The position numbers were made by a program, and so were the translations under genes. A DNA stretch of 64,000 bases, taken from assembly GCA_977020255.1 (NCBI GenBank), contig CDROCS010002834.1, positions 310,001 to 374,000 of the forward strand, written 5' to 3'. Source of the stretch: Obrimoposthia wandeli. Taxonomy: Eukaryota. Below, in pieces: positions 1 through 14,470 of this stretch. Within the stretch, counting starts at the first letter, position 1; each line of letters starts with the position of its first letter. Under the pieces are notes generated by a model. The model did no database searches. It saw nothing but the letters and a program-made list of their open reading frames with translations, and was not told the origin of the DNA.

Positions 1-93
1 CTACACACCCTTCCTCACGACTGAAAGTACTTTACAACCCGAAGGCCTTCTTCATACACGCGGCATGGCTGCATCAGGGTTTCCCCCATTGTG

Positions 94-176
<83 letters not shown>

Positions 177-185
177 GGGATCGTT

Positions 186-221
<36 letters not shown>

Positions 222-463
222 CCACCTGGGCTAATCTTAGCGCGAGAGGCCCGAAGGTCCCCCTCTTTGGTCCGAAGACGTTATGCGGTATTAGCTATCG
301 TTTCCAATAGTTATCCCCCACACTAAGGCATATTCCCAGGCGTTACTCACCCGTCCGCCGCTCGTCAGCAAAGAAAGCAAGCTTTCTTTCTGTTACCGCT
401 CGACTTGCATGTGTTAGGCCTGCCGCCAGCGTTCAATCTGAGCCATGATCAAACTCTTCAATT
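1..463 (-). rRNA. rrs: 16S rRNA, 5' part (continues past the left window edge)
   Basis: Reverse complement reads AATTGAAGAGTTTGATCATGGCTCAG (27F site) and ACTCCTACGGGAGGCAGCAG (338F site); V1 helix AACAGAAAGAAAGCTTGCTTTCTTTGCTG. Confidence 0.99.
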
Positions 464-614
464 AAAGTTCTGTTGGTCTTTCGACCGGCTCAATGATTTT
501 TACTGATATTCTTGTTTCATCTTCTTGCGAAGAATGAAGCATAAATTGACTGTGTCATCTTGCGATGATTAAGGTCACTCAGTTCATTGATAAATCTTTC
601 GACTTAAAATTTCA

Positions 615-977: not shown

Positions 978-993
978 TGGCATCAAGATTGTA
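978..993 (+). promoter_or_regulatory. candidate sigma54 promoter upstream of the EPS locus
   Basis: TGGCATCAAGATTGTA: GG-N10-GT spacing, good -24 element, variant -12; about 300 nt upstream of the first ATG. Confidence 0.4.
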
Positions 994-2632: not shown

Positions 2633-2674
2633 TGACAACCTTTACAGCAGAGCTCATCCAATTGAAGGCTTAAA

Positions 2675-2694
2675 TTGCAATTTGCAATTTGCAA
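2675..2694. repeat. (TTGCAAT)x2.9 tandem heptamer
   Basis: TTGCAAT TTGCAAT TTGCAA in the intergenic region 31 nt upstream of the 2726 ATG. Confidence 0.8.
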
Positions 2695-2725
2695 AAACGA
2701 AAGTACAACAACCTAAGGAGTATTT

Positions 2726-3862
2726 ATGGAATTTCTTGTATTTGGTGAAGATTGGGGACGGCACCCTTCAAGTAGCCAGCACTTACTTTCAGTACTAATG
2801 CGTGATCATTCTGTAACTTGGATAAACTCCATAGGGTTAAGGCAACCCAACTTTACAATGCGAGATTTTAAACGCATTAATGAAAAAATCACTACAGCCC
2901 TCACTAATTATGAACCACCAGCATTATCCATTCAGCCAACAAAAATCATCAAACCTTTAGTATGGCCTTTAGCAAAAGGTTCTAGCACCCGAAAAATAAA
3001 TCAGTTTTTATTGAAAAAACAAATTCCAACCAAGCGATACCAACGAATTATATGGGCAGCATTACCTACCGCAATTGACTATCTCGATATAAGTGACAGT
3101 GATTTGGTGATTTATTATTGTGGCGATGATTTTTCTGCCCTTGCCGGTGTTGACCATCAATATGTCGTTGAAGCTGAAAAACGTCTTGTTCAAGCATCTG
3201 ATATCATTCTTACTGCTAGCTCAACGTTACAACAAAAATTTCCACAAGATAAAACTTGGCTTCTGCCTCATGGTGTGTCTATAAATAGCTTTAAACAACC
3301 AAGCCCTAAACCTCTTAATATATGCACAGAACAACCTAGCATTGGTTTTTATGGCAGCATTAACAATTGGTTAGATATAGAACTACTCAAATGTTTAGCG
3401 AAATCTCGTCCAAATATAAATTTCTATCTAGTTGGTAGAGAAGATATTGATACCCTTTCACTCAAGAAACTCTCGAATATCCACCTTTTACCTGCCTGCC
3501 CCCACAATCAACTGCCTGGGTACCTGCAACATTGGTCTGCCGCCATTTTACCTTTTATTGATAACCCTCAAATACACGCTTGTAACCCTTTAAAGCTAAG
3601 GGAGTACCTCGCTTCTGGATGTCCGGTCATTAGTTCCAATTTTCCAGCAGCAGCCGAATACCAACCACTGGTCACCATTGCAACGAATGTTAATCAATGG
3701 CTGGAAGCAATCGATAAATTAATCTTATTATCAGTTTCAGAACGCCAACATTATGCAATTAGAGCACAAGATAAAGTAAAAGATGAAAGCTGGGAAAATA
3801 GAGCTCAAGAAGTACTCCAATTAATTTCATCTACATTAAATCACAAGAAATCTTCGACTTAA
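2726..3862 (+). CDS. GT-B glycosyltransferase (family 1/4, SypN-like)
   Basis: VFGEDWGRHPSSSQHL N-terminus; IGFYGSI and NPLKLREYLASGCPVISS donor-binding motif. Confidence 0.85.
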   Translation: MEFLVFGEDWGRHPSSSQHLLSVLMRDHSVTWINSIGLRQPNFTMRDFKRINEKITTALTNYEPPALSIQPTKIIKPLVWPLAKGSSTRKINQFLLKKQIPTKRYQRIIWAALPTAIDYLDISDSDLVIYYCGDDFSALAGVDHQYVVEAEKRLVQASDIILTASSTLQQKFPQDKTWLLPHGVSINSFKQPSPKPLNICTEQPSIGFYGSINNWLDIELLKCLAKSRPNINFYLVGREDIDTLSLKKLSNIHLLPACPHNQLPGYLQHWSAAILPFIDNPQIHACNPLKLREYLASGCPVISSNFPAAAEYQPLVTIATNVNQWLEAIDKLILLSVSERQHYAIRAQDKVKDESWENRAQEVLQLISSTLNHKKSST

Positions 3863-3870
3863 TCCCACAT

Positions 3871-3887
3871 TCGGCATTTTTTTTGCT
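3871..3887 (+). promoter_or_regulatory. candidate sigma54 promoter with T8 tract
   Basis: TCGGCATTTTTTTTGCT: GG(3873-74)-N10-GC(3885-86); predicted +1 near 3898, SD AGGGAG and ATG 3926 follow. Confidence 0.65.
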
Positions 3888-3925
3888 ACACCTTTCTATA
3901 CGCCATCAATAAAAGGGAGATAAAG

Positions 3926-4264
3926 ATGAAATGGATTGGGTACTTTATTTTGACATCATTCTTATGGGGCTGCGCAAGCTCTCCACAAACAAGCCAAGAA
4001 CTAGAGCTCTTTTTTAGTCCGGAACAAATTTCACTGACGGCAGAACAAACACGAAAGATTAACGTTTTTTTAGAAAATAACCCTTATAACCAACTCACGG
4101 TGTATGTTGGGCCTGCAAATTTAGACGATAAATTTAAAGCATTATTACAAAGTCAAAAGCGTATTAAAGCTGTCAACAAATTATCACAAGTTAAAGATAT
4201 ACCAATGCGGTTGGAATTTGCACCACAACAAGCAGCCGATACGCTGTTAATTCAGAGTCAGTAG
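3926..4264 (+). CDS. small lipoprotein of unknown function (possible degenerate OmpA-like fold)
   Basis: Good SD; hydrophobic signal peptide with lipobox LWGC; ends 1 nt before the next gene. Confidence 0.75.
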   Translation: MKWIGYFILTSFLWGCASSPQTSQELELFFSPEQISLTAEQTRKINVFLENNPYNQLTVYVGPANLDDKFKALLQSQKRIKAVNKLSQVKDIPMRLEFAPQQAADTLLIQSQ

Positions 4265-4265
4265 T

Positions 4266-5693
4266 ATGCGCCATTTGGTCTTTGCCCGGCTCTACCCTTT
4301 ACTCCATGCTTTATGGCGCTATCGGTATTTGATTTTAATTCCAATCATTATCATGCCGATTTTAATGACTTCTGGCGGTTTATTTAAAGCTAAGCGTTAC
4401 TATTCAGAGACAACAATCTTGGTGCAAGAATCAGCAATGCTTAATCCATTTTTGGAAGACCTCTCAATCTCTGTCAACTTAAAGCAACGAATTAAAGCAT
4501 TACAAGTCATCATTCATAGCCGAAATATTTTAGAACAAGTCATCCATGATTTAGGCCTAGCACCTCCCGATGATTTACTTCTAACAGATAATATGATCCA
4601 CATACTGCGTAAAAACTTATCTCTTTCACTACTTGGTAATGATCTTGTTCAACTTAGCCTAACCTGGTCAACACCATCAGAAATGCCTTTAATTTTAAAT
4701 ACAGTATCTGATGTTTTTAAAGAAAAATTACGCGCGCCAGGACGAGCATCTGTTGATGGTTCTGAACTGTTCTTACAACGACAATTAGATACAACCCAAT
4801 TAGATCTCGAATTAGCAGAGAGTGCTCTTGCGAAATTCAAAACAGCTAACGCCAATAACCTACCTCAATTACAAGGTGCAAAAGCACAAAATGATCTCCA
4901 GTTAGCCAATCAAATCCGTGAAACTGAACTGAACTTACTACAGGCTAAAAGCAAGCGAGCCAATCTTTATCAGAGGCTAGCCAGCACCAACCCTGTTGTT
5001 GGTATCTTAGAGCAAGAGATCGTCAAAGCTGAGGCTGAACTGGCCATATTACGCGCAAGCTACACTGACCAACACTCATCCGTTAAAGGTGTGATCCGAC
5101 GACTTAAACGTTTAAAGCAGGAAAGATCTCGTCTTGTTGATGAACAACAAGCTTTGAGTTCACAGGAAATAAATCAACTGTGGCAGCGAATTGCAAACAG
5201 CAATCAAAGTAACGACCCAACTAAGCAACCGATCTTATTAAGTCAATTTGAAAAGCTACAACATGCAGAAAGCCAAATTCAAGCATCAAGCGAAGAACTC
5301 TCCCTGTTAAAAAAACAAACCAACGAACTATCAGAAAAACGAATGGAATTTGCAGGTTTAGAAAAGCAGCTAAAAATATTACAACGAAACTACGATGTTA
5401 AATCAAGTATTTACAATCAGCTATTTGAGCGTTATGAAATGGCCAAGATAACAGGACACCTTGGCCGTTTTGAAGAACCCGAAAAATTAAAAGTGATTGT
5501 GCAGCCAATAGAACCTAAGAGACCACTGAACTGGCCATGGTGGATCAATTTTTGCTTAGGTATTGTTGTTGGTTTTGGATTAGGGACCTCCCTTGTAGGA
5601 GTCGTCATCCTATTTGATACACGTCTTTATCAAACCGACCATATTGCCAAATTAACACAATCACAGGTACTGGTTCGAGTACCTCTGTTTTAG
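4266..5693 (+). CDS. polysaccharide co-polymerase/chain-length determinant (SypO/GumC/Wzz-like)
   Basis: N- and C-terminal TM helices flanking a long coiled coil; YYSETTILVQ and P-x-x-P-x-x-P before TM2; no kinase domain. Confidence 0.85.
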   Translation: MRHLVFARLYPLLHALWRYRYLILIPIIIMPILMTSGGLFKAKRYYSETTILVQESAMLNPFLEDLSISVNLKQRIKALQVIIHSRNILEQVIHDLGLAPPDDLLLTDNMIHILRKNLSLSLLGNDLVQLSLTWSTPSEMPLILNTVSDVFKEKLRAPGRASVDGSELFLQRQLDTTQLDLELAESALAKFKTANANNLPQLQGAKAQNDLQLANQIRETELNLLQAKSKRANLYQRLASTNPVVGILEQEIVKAEAELAILRASYTDQHSSVKGVIRRLKRLKQERSRLVDEQQALSSQEINQLWQRIANSNQSNDPTKQPILLSQFEKLQHAESQIQASSEELSLLKKQTNELSEKRMEFAGLEKQLKILQRNYDVKSSIYNQLFERYEMAKITGHLGRFEEPEKLKVIVQPIEPKRPLNWPWWINFCLGIVVGFGLGTSLVGVVILFDTRLYQTDHIAKLTQSQVLVRVPLF

Positions 5694-5703
5694 GGGTAAT
5701 CCA

Positions 5704-6777
5704 ATGAAACACATCACATTACAAGTTGTTCAACATCTACAACCAGGAGGAATAGAAAAACTGGTGCTGAATCTCGCTCGGTTTGCCTCCCCTTGCCACC
5801 AAGTTTATATCGTCGCACTCGAAGGGAATAAAGAAACAGCCATAATGCAGTGGCCTGAATTACGCACTTTCGAATCACAATTATTTTTCCTCAATAAACC
5901 TACGGGTATGAATATTTCAACCATTATCAAGTTAAAAAAACTGATAGCAAAACTGAATGTAACCATGCTTCATTCACACCATATCGGTCCTTTATTATAT
6001 AGCCGACTAGCATTATTGGGGCATAACGCAACACACATACATACTGAACACGATAGCTGGCATCTAGCCGATAAAAAGCAGTGCCGCATGACACGTTACT
6101 TACTGAAAACTAATAGAGTAAAACTCATTGCTGATGCACCAAGAGTTGCCTATCAACTAGAAAAAATATTATTACTCCGCCCAGATCATGTAATTTGTAA
6201 TGGTATTGATACCCAGTATTTCACCCCAGGAAATCAGCTCATCGCACGTAAACAATTTAACCTTCCATTGGATAAAAAACTGATCGGTTGTGCCGGTCGA
6301 CTGGTTAAAGAAAAAGGGATTGATACATTAATAAGGGCGCTTCATGACCTACCTGAAGATCACCACCTTGTTATCGCTGGTGATGGTTCTCAATCTCTAC
6401 AATTACGCGCAGAAGCACATAAATGGCTGGTTACTGATCGTATACATTGGCTTGGTTATTGCGCTCAAATGCGTAACTTCTACCGTGCTATTGATGTTTT
6501 TTGTATGCCGTCTCGTCAAGAGGGCCTTCCTCTTGCATTATTAGAAGCGCAATCTTGTGGTAATAGTATTGTTGCAACGACGGTAGGCGCAATCCCTGAT
6601 CTTATTTGCCCGCAAACAGGAATTTTAGTTCCGCCAGATGATGAAACAGCGCTAACAAAGGCATTAATACAAGTATTAGATCAAGACCCAAATACAGTGA
6701 ATCAAACAGTACAGTTCATTCAACACCAAGCAGACGTGAGAGCCATGACTGCTGCATATGAAGCATTATCCTGTTAA
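5704..6777 (+). CDS. GT4 glycosyltransferase (SypP-like by position)
   Basis: QPGGIEK, HSHH, GCAGRLVKEKG, PSRQEGLPLALLEAQ. Confidence 0.9.
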   Translation: MKHITLQVVQHLQPGGIEKLVLNLARFASPCHQVYIVALEGNKETAIMQWPELRTFESQLFFLNKPTGMNISTIIKLKKLIAKLNVTMLHSHHIGPLLYSRLALLGHNATHIHTEHDSWHLADKKQCRMTRYLLKTNRVKLIADAPRVAYQLEKILLLRPDHVICNGIDTQYFTPGNQLIARKQFNLPLDKKLIGCAGRLVKEKGIDTLIRALHDLPEDHHLVIAGDGSQSLQLRAEAHKWLVTDRIHWLGYCAQMRNFYRAIDVFCMPSRQEGLPLALLEAQSCGNSIVATTVGAIPDLICPQTGILVPPDDETALTKALIQVLDQDPNTVNQTVQFIQHQADVRAMTAAYEALSC

Positions 6778-6801: not shown

Positions 6802-8595
6802 ATGATTTTAGGATGGATCATTTTATTTGTAATAACTGCCGTTATTATCTATCACCACTTTGTTTATACCGCAGCATTAGTTTGGTTGGGAAAAAAAAGA
6901 AAAAATGAGATAAAAGAAAAACACAAAGATCCATTAACTTTCCCCCGTATCTCTCTCATCATGCCCGCTCATAATGAAGGGGCTTACATTGAAGCCAAGC
7001 TCGCGAATATATTAATGCTCGATTATCCGGCTGAAAAATTACAGGTTTTAATCTGCTGTGATGGCTGTAGTGATAATACAGCTGAAATTATTGCACAGTA
7101 TGAATCGCAATTTACCGCTGCTGGAATCAGTCTTAAATGCTGGGTTAAAAAAAACAACCGAGGAAAATTAGCCCGCCTCAATGAATTAATGACTTATGCA
7201 AAAAACAAAACCGACATTATTTCTCTTACCGATACCTCAGCCTTAATATCAATTGATGCATTAAAACAAGTTGCTAGAAATTTTGAAAATGAACAAACAG
7301 GTGCAATTACTTGTAGCTATTTACTGGCCTCTCCTTCTGACGGTGAAAAACAGTATTGGCAATGGCAGAATAATATCCGTTCTGCTGAGTCTCAATTGGG
7401 CAGTGTTATCGGAGGAAATGGTGCATTTTATGCCATGAGATCTCACCTCTACTCTCCTCTTCCCGAAGATACGATCAATGATGATTTCATTTTACCTATG
7501 ATGGTATTAAAGCAAGGCTTTAACGTTATCTTTAATCAAAACATCAACAGTGTTGAAATTGCACCAACAAGTCAAAATGAAAATCATCAAAGACGACAAA
7601 GAATTGGAGCCGGTAATCTACAACAATTAATCCGTTGCCAATTTGTCTTTACACACAAAAGCCTGGGAGTCCGTTGGTTGTTTACTTCAGGTAAAGGCCT
7701 GCGCACAGTGATGCCATTCCTATTCGTGGGTTATTTCATTACTTCAGTATTAATGGCATTACAAGGATCGATATTGGCCTTGGGCATGGTGCTTACTCAA
7801 TTATTGATATACGGTGTTGCATCTCTACCGCTAATCAATATCCATTCAAAGGTTATCGATAAAGTTCATTACATTATCGGGTCATACTATTCCTCTTTAC
7901 TCGGCATGCTGCGTTATTGCAACGGACAATTTACGCAAGGGTGGCGCCATTTACCGCCCCTGAGTAACTATCAAACACAATCAACCCAAACTATAAAGCG
8001 ACTGAGCGATATCATTTTTAGCTGCATAGGCCTTACTCTTACATTGCCGCTATGGCCATTCATCGCCTTCGCCATTAAATACGATTCTTCAGGTCCTATC
8101 TTTTATCGTCAAATACGAGTCGGCCAAATAAGTGAAACAAAAGTAGAGTTATTTGAAATATTTAAGTTTCGTACCATGACAAATGATGCAGAAAAAAAAT
8201 CTGGCGCGGTATGGGCGACAAAAAATGACCCTCGAATAACCCATATTGGTCGCTTTTTGCGTGCAACACGCTTAGACGAACTCCCACAATTCATCAATGT
8301 AATAAGAGGCGACATGTCTTTAATTGGTCCTCGCCCTGAACGACCAGAAATGTGCGGTAATTTGCAAAATGCATTGCCATTCTATTTAGAAAGAACAACG
8401 GGGCTTCGACCAGGCCTAACAGGTTTAGCGCAAGTTAACAGTGGTTACGACAATGATCTTGAAGATGTCAAAAATAAAATAGCTTGGGATCATGCTTATG
8501 CCATCGCATTAAGCTCACCAATACAGTGGCTTAGAATGGATTTATATATTCTATTTAAGACATCTTACATTATGTTTGCCAAGCGAGGGCAATAA
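6802..8595 (+). CDS. GT2 glycosyltransferase fused to a priming phosphoglycosyl (sugar) transferase (SypQ+SypR-like)
   Basis: N-half: PAHNE, CDGCSD, GGNGAFYAMR, INDDF; C-half: KRLSD, KFRTM, DPRIT, DELPQ, DMSLIGPRPE; single uninterrupted frame. Confidence 0.88.
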   Translation: MILGWIILFVITAVIIYHHFVYTAALVWLGKKRKNEIKEKHKDPLTFPRISLIMPAHNEGAYIEAKLANILMLDYPAEKLQVLICCDGCSDNTAEIIAQYESQFTAAGISLKCWVKKNNRGKLARLNELMTYAKNKTDIISLTDTSALISIDALKQVARNFENEQTGAITCSYLLASPSDGEKQYWQWQNNIRSAESQLGSVIGGNGAFYAMRSHLYSPLPEDTINDDFILPMMVLKQGFNVIFNQNINSVEIAPTSQNENHQRRQRIGAGNLQQLIRCQFVFTHKSLGVRWLFTSGKGLRTVMPFLFVGYFITSVLMALQGSILALGMVLTQLLIYGVASLPLINIHSKVIDKVHYIIGSYYSSLLGMLRYCNGQFTQGWRHLPPLSNYQTQSTQTIKRLSDIIFSCIGLTLTLPLWPFIAFAIKYDSSGPIFYRQIRVGQISETKVELFEIFKFRTMTNDAEKKSGAVWATKNDPRITHIGRFLRATRLDELPQFINVIRGDMSLIGPRPERPEMCGNLQNALPFYLERTTGLRPGLTGLAQVNSGYDNDLEDVKNKIAWDHAYAIALSSPIQWLRMDLYILFKTSYIMFAKRGQ

Positions 8596-8596
8596 C

Positions 8597-8612
8597 TGGC
8601 ACAGGCTTTGTA
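8597..8612 (+). promoter_or_regulatory. candidate sigma54 promoter of the sypABCD-like operon
   Basis: TGGCACAGGCTTTGTA: perfect TGGCAC -24 element, GG-N10-GT; starts 2 nt after the upstream stop and 41 nt before ATG 8653. Confidence 0.65.
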
Positions 8613-13424: not shown

Positions 13425-14405
13425 TCACAATTGATAGGCTTTCTCTATTTGCTCCCAACGACTTTCACCACTGAAATCATCAACAATTTTGGCATGCGAA
13501 TCTTTTGAAAGCGCTCCCCACTCGATGTTATCGTAAGCACTCAACTTACCAATTAAAATCGATAAATTTTTCCAATCCGACTCTGCAACAATCCAATCAC
13601 TCGCCACTAATTTAGAAAGATCACCCACATTTGTCGCGATAACAGGAACACCATATGCCATCGCCTCTAACGCCGCCATTGGCAGCCCCTCAGCGCGAGA
13701 ACTAATTACAAGCACATCAATCAAAGACCAATATTCATCCATGGCGTCAACTGCGCCATACCACTGAATGTTTTTTTTATTAATGAGTCGCGATTGTTCA
13801 TCTCCATCACCAAAAACATGAAATTGGCAGCTGGTAAGCACATCACTCAACTCAATAAAGCGATCAATCCCTTTTTCATGACTAAGGCGACCAACAAAAC
13901 CAACTTGTAGAACCTCATGTTTAGATCGCATTTTGAACTCTGGTAATTGCATAATGAAATTATTTAACAAATGACAACGAAAAGGGATGGTACGCTTAAT
14001 CCTAGAGCTGACAGCAAAGTTATAGGATAGAAAACTTGTTACTCGATTTAAATACTCATAAGAAGCCAATTTTCCACTTAACTTTTCTCCCGCATGAAAA
14101 CTACTGATTGCACGAAATGAGTACCTAAGCCGATAAAATCGAGAGAGTAAAGAGGCTTTATAGCCATGGGCATGAATAACATCAGAGGGTAAAAGTAGAC
14201 GAAAGAATGAAGAAGGGCCCATATCAGATAAGAAACGATACTTTATGTTATTTGCATAGAGACGTTGATACAGAGGGTGATCGGGATAATGGTCAACAAA
14301 CAAAACTTCAACGTCTCTGTTTTGTCGTTTAACCAGAAGAGCAAATTGCAGTATATGACTTTCGATACCACCAAAGCCTGAACTATCGATAAATAAATAA
14401 ATCAT
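13425..14405 (-). CDS. GT4 glycosyltransferase (SypI-like)
   Basis: FIDSSGFGGIESH, HAHGYKAS, GFVGRLSHEKG, SSRAEGLPMAALEA; ATG 14405 preferred because GGAG lies 6 nt upstream. Confidence 0.87.
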   Translation of the reverse strand: MIYLFIDSSGFGGIESHILQFALLVKRQNRDVEVLFVDHYPDHPLYQRLYANNIKYRFLSDMGPSSFFRLLLPSDVIHAHGYKASLLSRFYRLRYSFRAISSFHAGEKLSGKLASYEYLNRVTSFLSYNFAVSSRIKRTIPFRCHLLNNFIMQLPEFKMRSKHEVLQVGFVGRLSHEKGIDRFIELSDVLTSCQFHVFGDGDEQSRLINKKNIQWYGAVDAMDEYWSLIDVLVISSRAEGLPMAALEAMAYGVPVIATNVGDLSKLVASDWIVAESDWKNLSILIGKLSAYDNIEWGALSKDSHAKIVDDFSGESRWEQIEKAYQL

Positions 14406-14435
14406 GTCATTCTCCATACGATGAAGAATATTACA

Positions 14436-14452
14436 TGCAAAAAAAAAGCCGA
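14436..14452 (-). promoter_or_regulatory. candidate sigma54 promoter with T9 tract, overlapping the rplQ terminator
   Basis: Minus strand TCGGCTTTTTTTTTGCA: GG-N10-GC; 15/16 identical to the 3871 site; predicted +1 near 14425. Confidence 0.55.
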
Positions 14453-14470
14453 GTTTAAAAACTCGGCTTT
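14439..14470 (-). terminator. intrinsic terminator of the alpha operon
   Basis: Stem AAAGCCGAGTT/AACTCGGCTTT with T9 tail, just after the rplQ stop. Confidence 0.9.

What the first reader, a model, noticed from the sequence alone, without database searches (positions are those of the whole stretch)
3871..3887. Sigma54 promoter whose fixed spacer is a T8 homopolymer: candidate slipped-strand ON/OFF switch for EPS synthesis
Seen: TCGGCATTTTTTTTGCT has exact GG-N10-GC geometry, starts 9 nt after the upstream stop and lies about 40 nt before an SD and ATG that head the lipoprotein-SypO-GT4-GT2/PGT genes. Eight of the ten spacer bases are one T-run (3877-3884). Known: sigma54 does not tolerate even a 1-bp change in -24/-12 spacing, V. 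fischeri syp operons are sigma54/SypG-driven, and homopolymer tracts slip. Inference: T8 to T7/T9 would silence the genes that include the priming transferase, giving heritable phase variation of the polymer. I do not know of sigma54 spacer phase variation being described for a syp-type locus.
Basis: partly seen in the sequence, partly recalled or inferred. Interest (0 to 1): 0.78.

Follow-up and report, generated by a model that had tools for sequence, protein, structure and literature searches.

The report
Conserved sigma-54 promoter with fixed T-run
A short DNA motif in front of four sugar-polymer (biofilm) genes of a deep-sea Photobacterium is very probably a real sigma-54 promoter, but its run of eight T's has the same length in almost every relative, so it looks like a fixed part of the promoter and not an evolved on/off switch.

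Summary
Alone it is not beyond chance: sigma-54-like sites and T8 runs both occur at chance rate in the window.

Comparison rescues the promoter reading. A 16-nt block, GGCAY-T7-GCTA, is kept at 52-56 nt from the ATG in four mutually divergent Photobacterium lineages whose intergenic DNA otherwise differs. Shuffles give at most 8 nt. A second sigma-54-like site before the STAS gene is also conserved, and Vibrio fischeri has a sigma-54 site before its GT4 gene.

The phase-variation reading is mostly not supported. Of 43 non-redundant copies, 40 have T8, two have C+T7 with unchanged spacing, and one has T9. The T9 copy is a food-metagenome contig that looks genuine. This is the pattern of an ordinary homopolymer mutation, not a contingency locus. 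A T-tract before the -12 GC is a known sigma-54 affinity feature.

No SypG-type enhancer and no activator gene were found near the promoter. Within-sample tract heterogeneity and the transcription start could not be tested, because only contigs were available. The scan had noted this locus before, on this same window.

The parts
3872..3888 (+). Candidate sigma-54 promoter P1: -24 element CGGCAT, 5-nt T spacer, -12 element TTGCTA (GG 3873-3874, GC 3885-3886)
   Evidence: Sequence read. The 16-nt block is conserved in all related copies. Shuffle test.
3877..3884 (+). T8 homopolymer filling most of the -24/-12 spacer. It includes the consensus TT of TTGC and a T in place of the consensus C of GGCAC.
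   Evidence: Length census: 40 T8, 2 C+T7, 1 T9 among 43 non-redundant copies. T8 runs occur at chance frequency in the window.
3897..3898 (+). Predicted transcription start (inferred only), giving a 5' UTR of about 28 nt
   Evidence: Inferred from the usual 11-12 nt between the -12 GC and +1 in sigma-54 promoters. No transcript data were available.
3914..3918 (+). Shine-Dalgarno GGGAG for the lipoprotein gene
   Evidence: GGAG is conserved in relatives.
3926..4264 (+). 112-aa predicted lipoprotein (lipobox LWGC), first gene after P1. It was found only in Photobacterium and is absent from the V. fischeri syp locus.
4266..5693 (+). Wzz/GumC-type chain-length determinant, SypO-like (39% identical to the Aliivibrio fischeri homologue)
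5704..6777 (+). GT4 glycosyltransferase, SypP-like
6802..8595 (+). GT2 glycosyltransferase fused to a Bac_transf priming sugar transferase (SypQ-SypR-like fusion)
   Evidence: These are separate genes in V. fischeri.
2726..3862 (+). Upstream glycosyltransferase (SypN-like). Its stop is 10 nt before the GG of P1, and no terminator follows it.
8597..8612 (+). Second sigma-54-like promoter P2 (TGGCAC-N5-TTGTA) before the STAS/SypA-like gene, conserved in distant relatives
2675..2694 (+). Two overlapping perfect LuxO-type enhancer-like sites (TTGCAWWWTGCAA) about 1.19 kb upstream of P1. A link to P1 is not shown.
   Evidence: Motif definition from PMC10162802.

Best explanation
The motif is a genuine, conserved sigma-54 (-24/-12) promoter inside a compact syp-like exopolysaccharide locus. 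It drives, or boosts, transcription of the lipoprotein, SypO-like, GT4 and GT2-PGT genes when an unidentified enhancer-binding ATPase is active. The T-run is a fixed sequence feature of this promoter, not a length-variable switch. A T-tract just upstream of the -12 GC is a known feature that strengthens sigma-54 binding, and in two species the first T is the consensus C, with spacing unchanged. As a T8 homopolymer, the spacer is also a modest mutational hotspot. Rare +1 or -1 alleles, such as the single T9 allele found, should inactivate the promoter. These are ordinary, sporadic loss-of-function mutations, not a programmed reversible switch. Shown here: the motif, its geometry, its conservation and fixed distance to the ATG, the near-invariant length, and one T9 allele. 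Inferred: sigma-54 dependence, the start site, the T-tract affinity role in this promoter, and inactivity of T9.
For: Geometry and position were read. The block GGCAY-T7-GCTA is invariant in the window clade, the SS9/indicum/frigidiphilum clade, the L031 haplotype, the L041-44 lineage, P. jeanii and P. pectinilyticum, while flanking intergenic DNA diverges and varies in length from 63 to 116 nt. The GG-to-ATG distance is 52-56 nt in all of them, and the shared 16-nt block compares with a maximum of 8 nt in 1000 shuffles. The distant species have GGCAC, closer to consensus. No sigma-70-like promoter, terminator, hairpin or Rfam element explains the block. A second conserved sigma-54-like site lies before the STAS gene. 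The V. fischeri syp locus has TGGCAT-N5-CTGCA before its GT4 gene sypP, and PsypA and PsypP are SypG-dependent there (PMC10162802). The T-tract upstream of the -12 GC as a sigma-54 binding feature is stated in PMC3844500. Length census: 40 T8, 2 C+T7, 1 T9. Another strain has an unrelated 1-nt insertion early in the sypO-like gene, which shows sporadic disruption of this operon by other routes.
Against: There are no transcript, start-site or rpoN data. No enhancer was found within 240 nt upstream that is shared with P2 or resembles the SypG enhancer. No activator gene lies in the locus. At two mismatches to the consensus, the motif is a chance-level match on its own. Strict conservation of all five spacer T's is stronger than sigma-54 promoters usually show, and the affinity explanation for it is inferred, not tested. 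Assemblies show only the majority allele, so low-frequency switching within populations is not excluded.
Confidence: 0.62

Rival explanations
1. The T8 spacer is an evolved slipped-strand ON/OFF switch: T8 to T7 or T9 breaks the sigma-54 spacing and reversibly silences the priming-transferase operon, giving heritable phase variation of the polymer.
For: One natural T9 allele exists in a strain about 98-99% identical to the window (L020, from run X3). It is the only length change among the nine homopolymer runs of 7 or more that I compared over about 6.3 kb, and all genes there are intact, so it is unlikely to be a platform-wide homopolymer error. All five spacer T's are conserved across divergent lineages, which would also fit selection to keep a tract. 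In Vibrio mutation-accumulation lines, homopolymer indel rates rise with run length, and hypermutable tracts were enriched in biofilm genes, mostly in mutS mutants (PMC5854121).
Against: 42 of 43 non-redundant copies keep GG-N10-GC, taken from isolates, MAGs and metagenomes of many studies. Real contingency loci show many tract lengths among strains. Two species shorten the run to T7 by substitution with spacing kept, so spacing is what is conserved, not tract length. T8 runs are no more frequent than chance in the window, and T8 is short for an A/T contingency tract (my own knowledge). With no terminator upstream, read-through could keep the genes on. No paper describing sigma-54 spacer phase variation was found.
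Confidence: 0.1
2. The conserved 16-mer is a functional cis element but not a sigma-54 promoter. It could be the operator of an unknown DNA-binding regulator, or an A/T-tract plus TTGCTA -35-like element of a sigma-70-family promoter.
For: No enhancer or activator was found for it. TTGCTA resembles a -35 hexamer. The full invariance of the spacer is unusual for sigma-54 sites.
Against: No -10 element is conserved at 16-18 nt downstream in the divergent lineages (sequences), and the sigma-70 scan found nothing. The block matches the sigma-54 consensus at every critical base (GG, TTGC) with the exact spacing, and it moves closer to consensus (GGCAC) in the distant species. The homologous V. fischeri system uses sigma-54 promoters.
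Confidence: 0.2
3. A chance match with no function, in which the T-run is just AT-rich intergenic DNA.
For: Motif and T8 frequencies in the window are at chance level.
Against: The block is conserved across four divergent lineages at a fixed distance from the ATG, and none of 1000 shuffles came near it.
Confidence: 0.03

Closest known systems
Vibrio (Aliivibrio) fischeri syp locus promoters (PsypA, PsypI, PsypM, PsypP), sigma-54 and SypG dependent
   Same: The gene families are homologous: Wzy, SypN-like GT, SypO-like Wzz, GT4, GT2, priming transferase, STAS, OmpA-like and Wza-like. Both have internal sigma-54-type -24/-12 sites between biosynthetic genes. The V. fischeri site before sypP also reads GGCAT at -24.
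   Different: V. fischeri has a perfect TTCTCA-N3-TGAGAA enhancer about 65 nt upstream of -24 at the two promoters I read. Here no such site exists, and there is no sypE/F/G in the locus. The V. fischeri spacer is AAACT, not a T-run. The promoter here precedes a Photobacterium-only lipoprotein gene placed before sypO, whereas in V. fischeri the promoter precedes sypP.
Sigma-54 promoters with a T-tract upstream of the -12 GC (for example rhizobial nifH-type promoters)
   Same: A run of T's directly 5' of the GC of the -12 element. This feature is reported to let sigma-54 bind even without core polymerase (PMC3844500).
   Different: The T-run here extends through the whole spacer up to the -24 element. 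Its effect on binding has not been measured for this promoter.
Promoter-spacer phase variation by homopolymer slippage in sigma-70 promoters (for example meningococcal and Bordetella surface-protein genes; my own knowledge; related case PMC2791445)
   Same: In principle the logic is the same: a repeat tract between two promoter elements whose spacing is critical.
   Different: Known cases have longer tracts and show many tract lengths among strains and within cultures. Here the length is the same in 42 of 43 copies. I found no described sigma-54 -24/-12 example.
Campylobacter flagellar phase variation through homopolymers in flgR/flgS/rpoN coding sequence
   Same: It is phase variation of a sigma-54 regulon by homopolymer slippage (papers listed).
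   Different: There the tracts lie in the coding sequence of the regulators, not in the promoter spacer.

Membership tests
Sigma-54 (RpoN) dependent promoter | GG and GC dinucleotides separated by exactly 10 nt | tested here: met
   GG 3873-3874 and GC 3885-3886. The same spacing is found in 42 of 43 non-redundant copies.
Sigma-54 (RpoN) dependent promoter | Match to the extended consensus TGGCAC-N5-TTGCW | tested here: met
   Two mismatches in the window. One mismatch in P. jeanii and in P. pectinilyticum.
Sigma-54 (RpoN) dependent promoter | Conserved at the orthologous position and at a suitable distance from the start codon | tested here: met
   A 16-nt block lies 52-56 nt from the ATG in four divergent lineages, while shuffles give at most 8 nt.
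Sigma-54 (RpoN) dependent promoter | Upstream enhancer bound by an AAA+ activator | tested here: inconclusive
   No motif is shared by the regions upstream of P1 and P2 above shuffle level, and no conserved palindrome was found. Perfect LuxO-type sites lie 1.2-1.7 kb upstream, but their target is unknown.
Sigma-54 (RpoN) dependent promoter | rpoN-dependent transcription with a start about 11-12 nt after the GC | not testable with these tools
   All runs were held as contigs only, and there were no raw RNA reads.
SypG/syp-enhancer regulated promoters of V. fischeri | Enhancer TTCTCANNNTGMDWN upstream of the -24 element | tested here: not met
   The best sites upstream of P1 and P2 have 2-5 mismatches and are not conserved. 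As a positive control, perfect sites occur at both V. fischeri promoters.
SypG/syp-enhancer regulated promoters of V. fischeri | sypG (with sypE and sypF) encoded within the locus | tested here: not met
   The locus runs from Wzy to the tyrosine-kinase-like gene plus a reverse GT, and is flanked by rRNA and ribosomal-protein genes, with no activator gene. The same is true in strain SS9.
Simple-sequence-repeat contingency locus (phase variation) | Tract length polymorphic among strains | tested here: not met
   40 T8, 2 C+T7 at the same spacing, and 1 T9 among 43 non-redundant copies. Runs X2, X4 and X5 also show no indel.
Simple-sequence-repeat contingency locus (phase variation) | Length heterogeneity within a clonal population | not testable with these tools
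   No raw reads were served, and contigs show only the majority allele.
Simple-sequence-repeat contingency locus (phase variation) | Tract unusually long or over-represented for the genome | tested here: not met
   T8/A8 runs: 12 observed against 13.8 expected in the window.
Simple-sequence-repeat contingency locus (phase variation) | Reversible ON/OFF phenotype linked to tract length | not testable with these tools
   This needs culture work.

The most novel reading that the evidence does not exclude
The T8 spacer could work as a low-frequency slipped-strand OFF (and back ON) switch of a sigma-54 promoter. The T9 allele in the food-metagenome strain would then be a natural OFF state. This would be the first case of phase variation acting through the rigid -24/-12 spacing of sigma-54, and it might matter mainly in mismatch-repair-deficient subpopulations.
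Probability: 0.1. Interest if true: 0.65.

Novelty: new member of a known kind. Interest (0 to 1): 0.3.

Why it matters
The result gives a well-supported internal promoter for a compact, regulator-less syp-like polysaccharide locus in the Photobacterium profundum group. It shows that this locus does not use the V. fischeri SypG enhancer, so an unknown activator, possibly of the LuxO type, must control it. It also removes most of the support for an attractive but unproven idea, sigma-54 spacer phase variation. One concrete, testable lead remains: a natural T9 allele. If T9 proves promoter-dead, it would be a clean natural experiment on the spacing rigidity of sigma-54 and on how this polymer is lost in food-associated strains.

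Tried and rejected
1. Motif statistics alone: sigma-54-like sites and T8 runs are both at chance level, so they cannot decide the question.
2. De novo search for an enhancer shared by the regions upstream of P1 and P2 (k-mers of 12-16 nt on both strands, and palindromes): nothing above shuffles. The best hits reflect coding conservation of the upstream genes.
3. The V. fischeri SypG enhancer pattern occurs at chance level in the window (36 matches against 35.5 expected) and is not conserved upstream of P1.
4. Terminator, hairpin or RNA-element explanations for the block: none found.
5. Sigma-70 reading (TTGCTA as a -35 element): no conserved -10.
6. Within-sample heterogeneity and start-site mapping: not possible.
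7. The exact-protein look-up of the window's own lipoprotein found nothing, so I used relatives' sequences instead.
8. The primary papers on the syp promoters (Yip 2005, Ray 2013) are not held. I took the motif definitions from PMC10162802 and verified them on the V. fischeri locus itself.

Full report
OBSERVATION. The 17-mer lies at 3871-3887, with GG at 3873-3874 and GC at 3885-3886. Exactly 10 nt lie between them (C, A and eight T's), and the T8 run is at 3877-3884. The upstream glycosyltransferase gene (2726-3862) stops 10 nt before the GG. An SD (GGGAG, 3914-3918) and an ATG (3926) follow, 39 nt after the motif. The downstream genes are a 112-aa lipoprotein with no family match, a Wzz/GumC-type SypO-like protein, a GT4, and a GT2 fused to a Bac_transf priming transferase. 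After those come STAS, OmpA-like, Wza/SLBB and tyrosine-kinase-like genes, and a reverse-strand GT. No enhancer-binding activator gene is present.

IS IT MORE THAN CHANCE? Not on its own. The pattern TGGCAC-N5-TTGCW with up to 2 mismatches occurs 53 times in the window against 38.7 expected. T8/A8 runs occur 12 times against 13.8 expected. The case therefore rests on comparison with other genomes.

COMPARATIVE EVIDENCE FOR A PROMOTER. The SypO-like protein found five species loci: P. indicum, P. profundum ATCC BAA-1252 and P. frigidiphilum at 93% identity, and P. jeanii and P. pectinilyticum at 65-66%.
- In the three close species the intergenic region shows scattered substitutions, but GGCA-T8-GCTA is untouched.
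- In P. jeanii and P. pectinilyticum the intergenic DNA is otherwise unalignable (64 and 116 nt long), yet both carry GGCAC-T7-GCTA. That is the same GG-N10-GC spacing, with the consensus C in place of the first T.
- A further divergent lineage (L041-L044, lipoprotein about 65% identical), strain SS9 (L045) and a third close haplotype (L031-L036) also keep GGCA-T8-GCTA.
- The GG-to-ATG distance is 52-56 nt in all of them.
- The 16-nt block shared with at most 1 mismatch by four divergent lineages compares with a maximum of 8 nt in 1000 shuffles.
- No sigma-70-like promoter, intrinsic terminator, stable hairpin or Rfam family explains the block. No -10-like hexamer is conserved downstream of TTGCTA.

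SUPPORT FROM THE REST OF THE LOCUS AND FROM V. FISCHERI. A second sigma-54-like site, TGGCAC-N5-TTGTA at 8597-8612, sits just before the STAS gene. It is conserved in SS9, P. jeanii and P. pectinilyticum, with TTGTA or TTGAA at -12. I fetched the Aliivibrio fischeri syp locus through its SypO homologue. It shows TGGCAT-AAACT-CTGCA before sypP and TGGCAC-N5-ATGAT before sypM. PsypA and PsypP are SypG-dependent in that organism (PMC10162802). So internal sigma-54 promoters are the norm in this gene-cluster family.

WHAT IS NOT LIKE V. FISCHERI. Both V. fischeri promoters have a perfect TTCTCA-N3-TGAGAA inverted repeat about 65 nt upstream of -24. This matches the published SypG enhancer motif TTCTCANNNTGMDWN (PMC10162802). 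In the window that pattern occurs only at chance level (36 matches against 35.5 expected). The best sites upstream of P1 and P2 have 2-5 mismatches and are not conserved. A de novo search for any motif shared by the P1 and P2 upstream regions found nothing above shuffles. The 'SypG-driven' analogy is therefore unsupported, and the activator is unknown.

A possible lead is two overlapping perfect LuxO-type sites (TTGCAWWWTGCAA) at 2675-2694, in the Wzy-GT gap. A single perfect site lies at the syntenic place in the close relatives, and inside a sypM-like gene in P. pectinilyticum and in L042. All four sites in the window with at most 1 mismatch lie in this 13-kb locus. They are 1.2-1.7 kb from P1, so I do not claim that they serve it.

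THE T-RUN: SWITCH OR FIXED FEATURE? I collected every copy I could:
- the species loci;
- a pattern scan of JGI metagenomes that allowed spacers of 5-11 nt, which found two contigs, both T8;
- exact-protein look-ups of eight lipoprotein variants in NCBI, JGI and Logan assemblies;
- four independent sequencing runs laid on the window.

Among 43 non-redundant copies, counting the window and removing three duplicate records, 40 have T8, two have C+T7 with identical spacing, and one has T9. Runs X2, X4 and X5 add further contigs without an indel. One of these is about 87% identical and has no gaps.

The single exception is L020, which is the contig of run X3, from a food metagenome, at depth 15.9. 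It reads GGCA-T9-GCTA, that is GG-N11-GC. Of the nine homopolymers of 7 or more that I compared between that contig and the window over about 6.3 kb, the promoter tract is the only one that differs in length, and all genes there are full length. I did not tabulate indels outside those runs. The T9 is therefore probably a real allele and not a platform-wide homopolymer error.

INTERPRETATION. A contingency locus is expected to show many tract lengths among strains. Here the spacing is the conserved quantity. It persists across lineages that have diverged to about 65% protein identity, and the run shortens to T7 by substitution without any length change. A T-tract immediately upstream of the -12 GC is a recognised feature of strongly binding sigma-54 promoters: sigma-54 binds such promoters even without core polymerase (PMC3844500). 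This gives a reason unrelated to slippage for conserving the T's.

In Vibrio mutation-accumulation work, single-base indels concentrate in homopolymers and scale with run length, chiefly when mismatch repair is lost (PMC5854121). So a T8 is a mild hotspot, and an occasional T9 allele is expected without any adaptive switch. Another strain (L037) carries an unrelated 1-nt insertion near the start of the sypO-like gene. This shows that the operon is sporadically disrupted in nature by other routes as well.

T9 need not silence the genes. No terminator separates them from the upstream Wzy and GT genes. These have their own candidate sigma-54-like site at 978-993, which is conserved in the profundum group.

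LIMITS.
- All sequencing runs were available only as contigs, which show the majority allele. Low-frequency switching inside a population, the transcription start and rpoN dependence remain untested.
- The rule that sigma-54 does not tolerate a 1-bp change in spacing comes from my knowledge of the classical nifH deletion work. I did not find it stated in the papers I could read.
- The literature search found no case of sigma-54 -24/-12 spacer phase variation. Known sigma-54-related phase variation acts through homopolymers in regulator coding sequences in Campylobacter.

VERDICT.
- The sigma-54 promoter reading is well supported by conservation (about 0.75 for sigma-54 itself, 0.62 for the whole explanation).
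- SypG control is not supported.
- An evolved slipped-strand switch is unlikely (about 0.1). One natural T9 allele is a concrete lead.
- This is a new member of a known kind, a T-tract sigma-54 promoter in a syp-like locus, and it is of modest interest.

The scan had noted this locus before, on this same window (s1-208543, s1-208538, s1-208651). I saw no follow-up of those notes.

Noticed in passing
window 2675-2694: There are two overlapping perfect LuxO-type enhancer sites (TTGCAATTTGCAA twice) in the Wzy-GT gap. The window has one extra 7-nt TTTGCAA unit compared with SS9, L020 and P. indicum, which have a single site, so this is a small tandem-repeat copy-number polymorphism in a putative activator site. 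A perfect site is also kept inside the sypM-like gene of P. pectinilyticum and L042.
   Followed up: partly
window 2675, 2682, 8362, 13947: All four matches in the 64-kb window to the LuxO-type motif with at most 1 mismatch fall inside the 13-kb polysaccharide locus (4 found, 1.26 expected). This hints that a LuxO/SypG-family activator controls the locus. The 8362 site lies in conserved coding sequence, so its conservation tells us little.
   Followed up: partly
window 8597-8612: A sigma-54-like site, TGGCACAGGCTTTGTA, starts right after the stop of the GT2-PGT gene and before the STAS gene. The -24 half is conserved in SS9, P. jeanii and P. pectinilyticum, but the -12 element reads TTGTA or TTGAA instead of TTGCA.
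   Followed up: partly
window 978-993: TGGCATCAAGATTGTA lies 323 nt upstream of the Wzy start and is identical in all profundum-group copies that reach that far. In SS9 an IS1595-family transposase gene sits just upstream of it. It is a possible first promoter of the locus, with the same TTGTA-type -12 element as the site at 8597.
   Followed up: partly
window 14436-14470 (minus strand): A GC-rich hairpin followed by T9 and then GCAT again gives GG-N10-GC (CGGC-T9-GCAT), ahead of the reverse-strand GT gene (13425-14417). The hairpin plus T-run is a classical intrinsic terminator for the converging operon upstream, so the T-run has a trivial explanation there. Conservation was not checked. Another reader has already noted it (s1-208538).
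   Followed up: no
L037:440-445 (Logan SRR19548104), equivalent to window about 4285: A 1-nt insertion and neighbouring substitutions near codon 7 of the sypO-like gene shift the frame, and the gene is called from a later start (446 instead of 475 aa). This is a natural disruptive variant in the same operon, and it is not at a homopolymer.
   Followed up: partly
L004, L005, L042 versus window 2633-2725: The more distant Photobacterium loci carry a 231-aa hexapeptide acetyltransferase (sypM-like) gene between Wzy and the GT, and a flippase gene upstream. The window clade lacks it and keeps only a 93-nt gap that holds the LuxO-type site. That gap may be a remnant of the lost gene's 5' part.
   Followed up: no
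window 1-470 (minus strand): The 5' part of a 16S rRNA gene abuts the polysaccharide locus. The findings index labels pieces from clearly different organisms (for example an Oleispira-like bacterium) as the 'same genome', so the source may be a mixed assembly.
   Followed up: no
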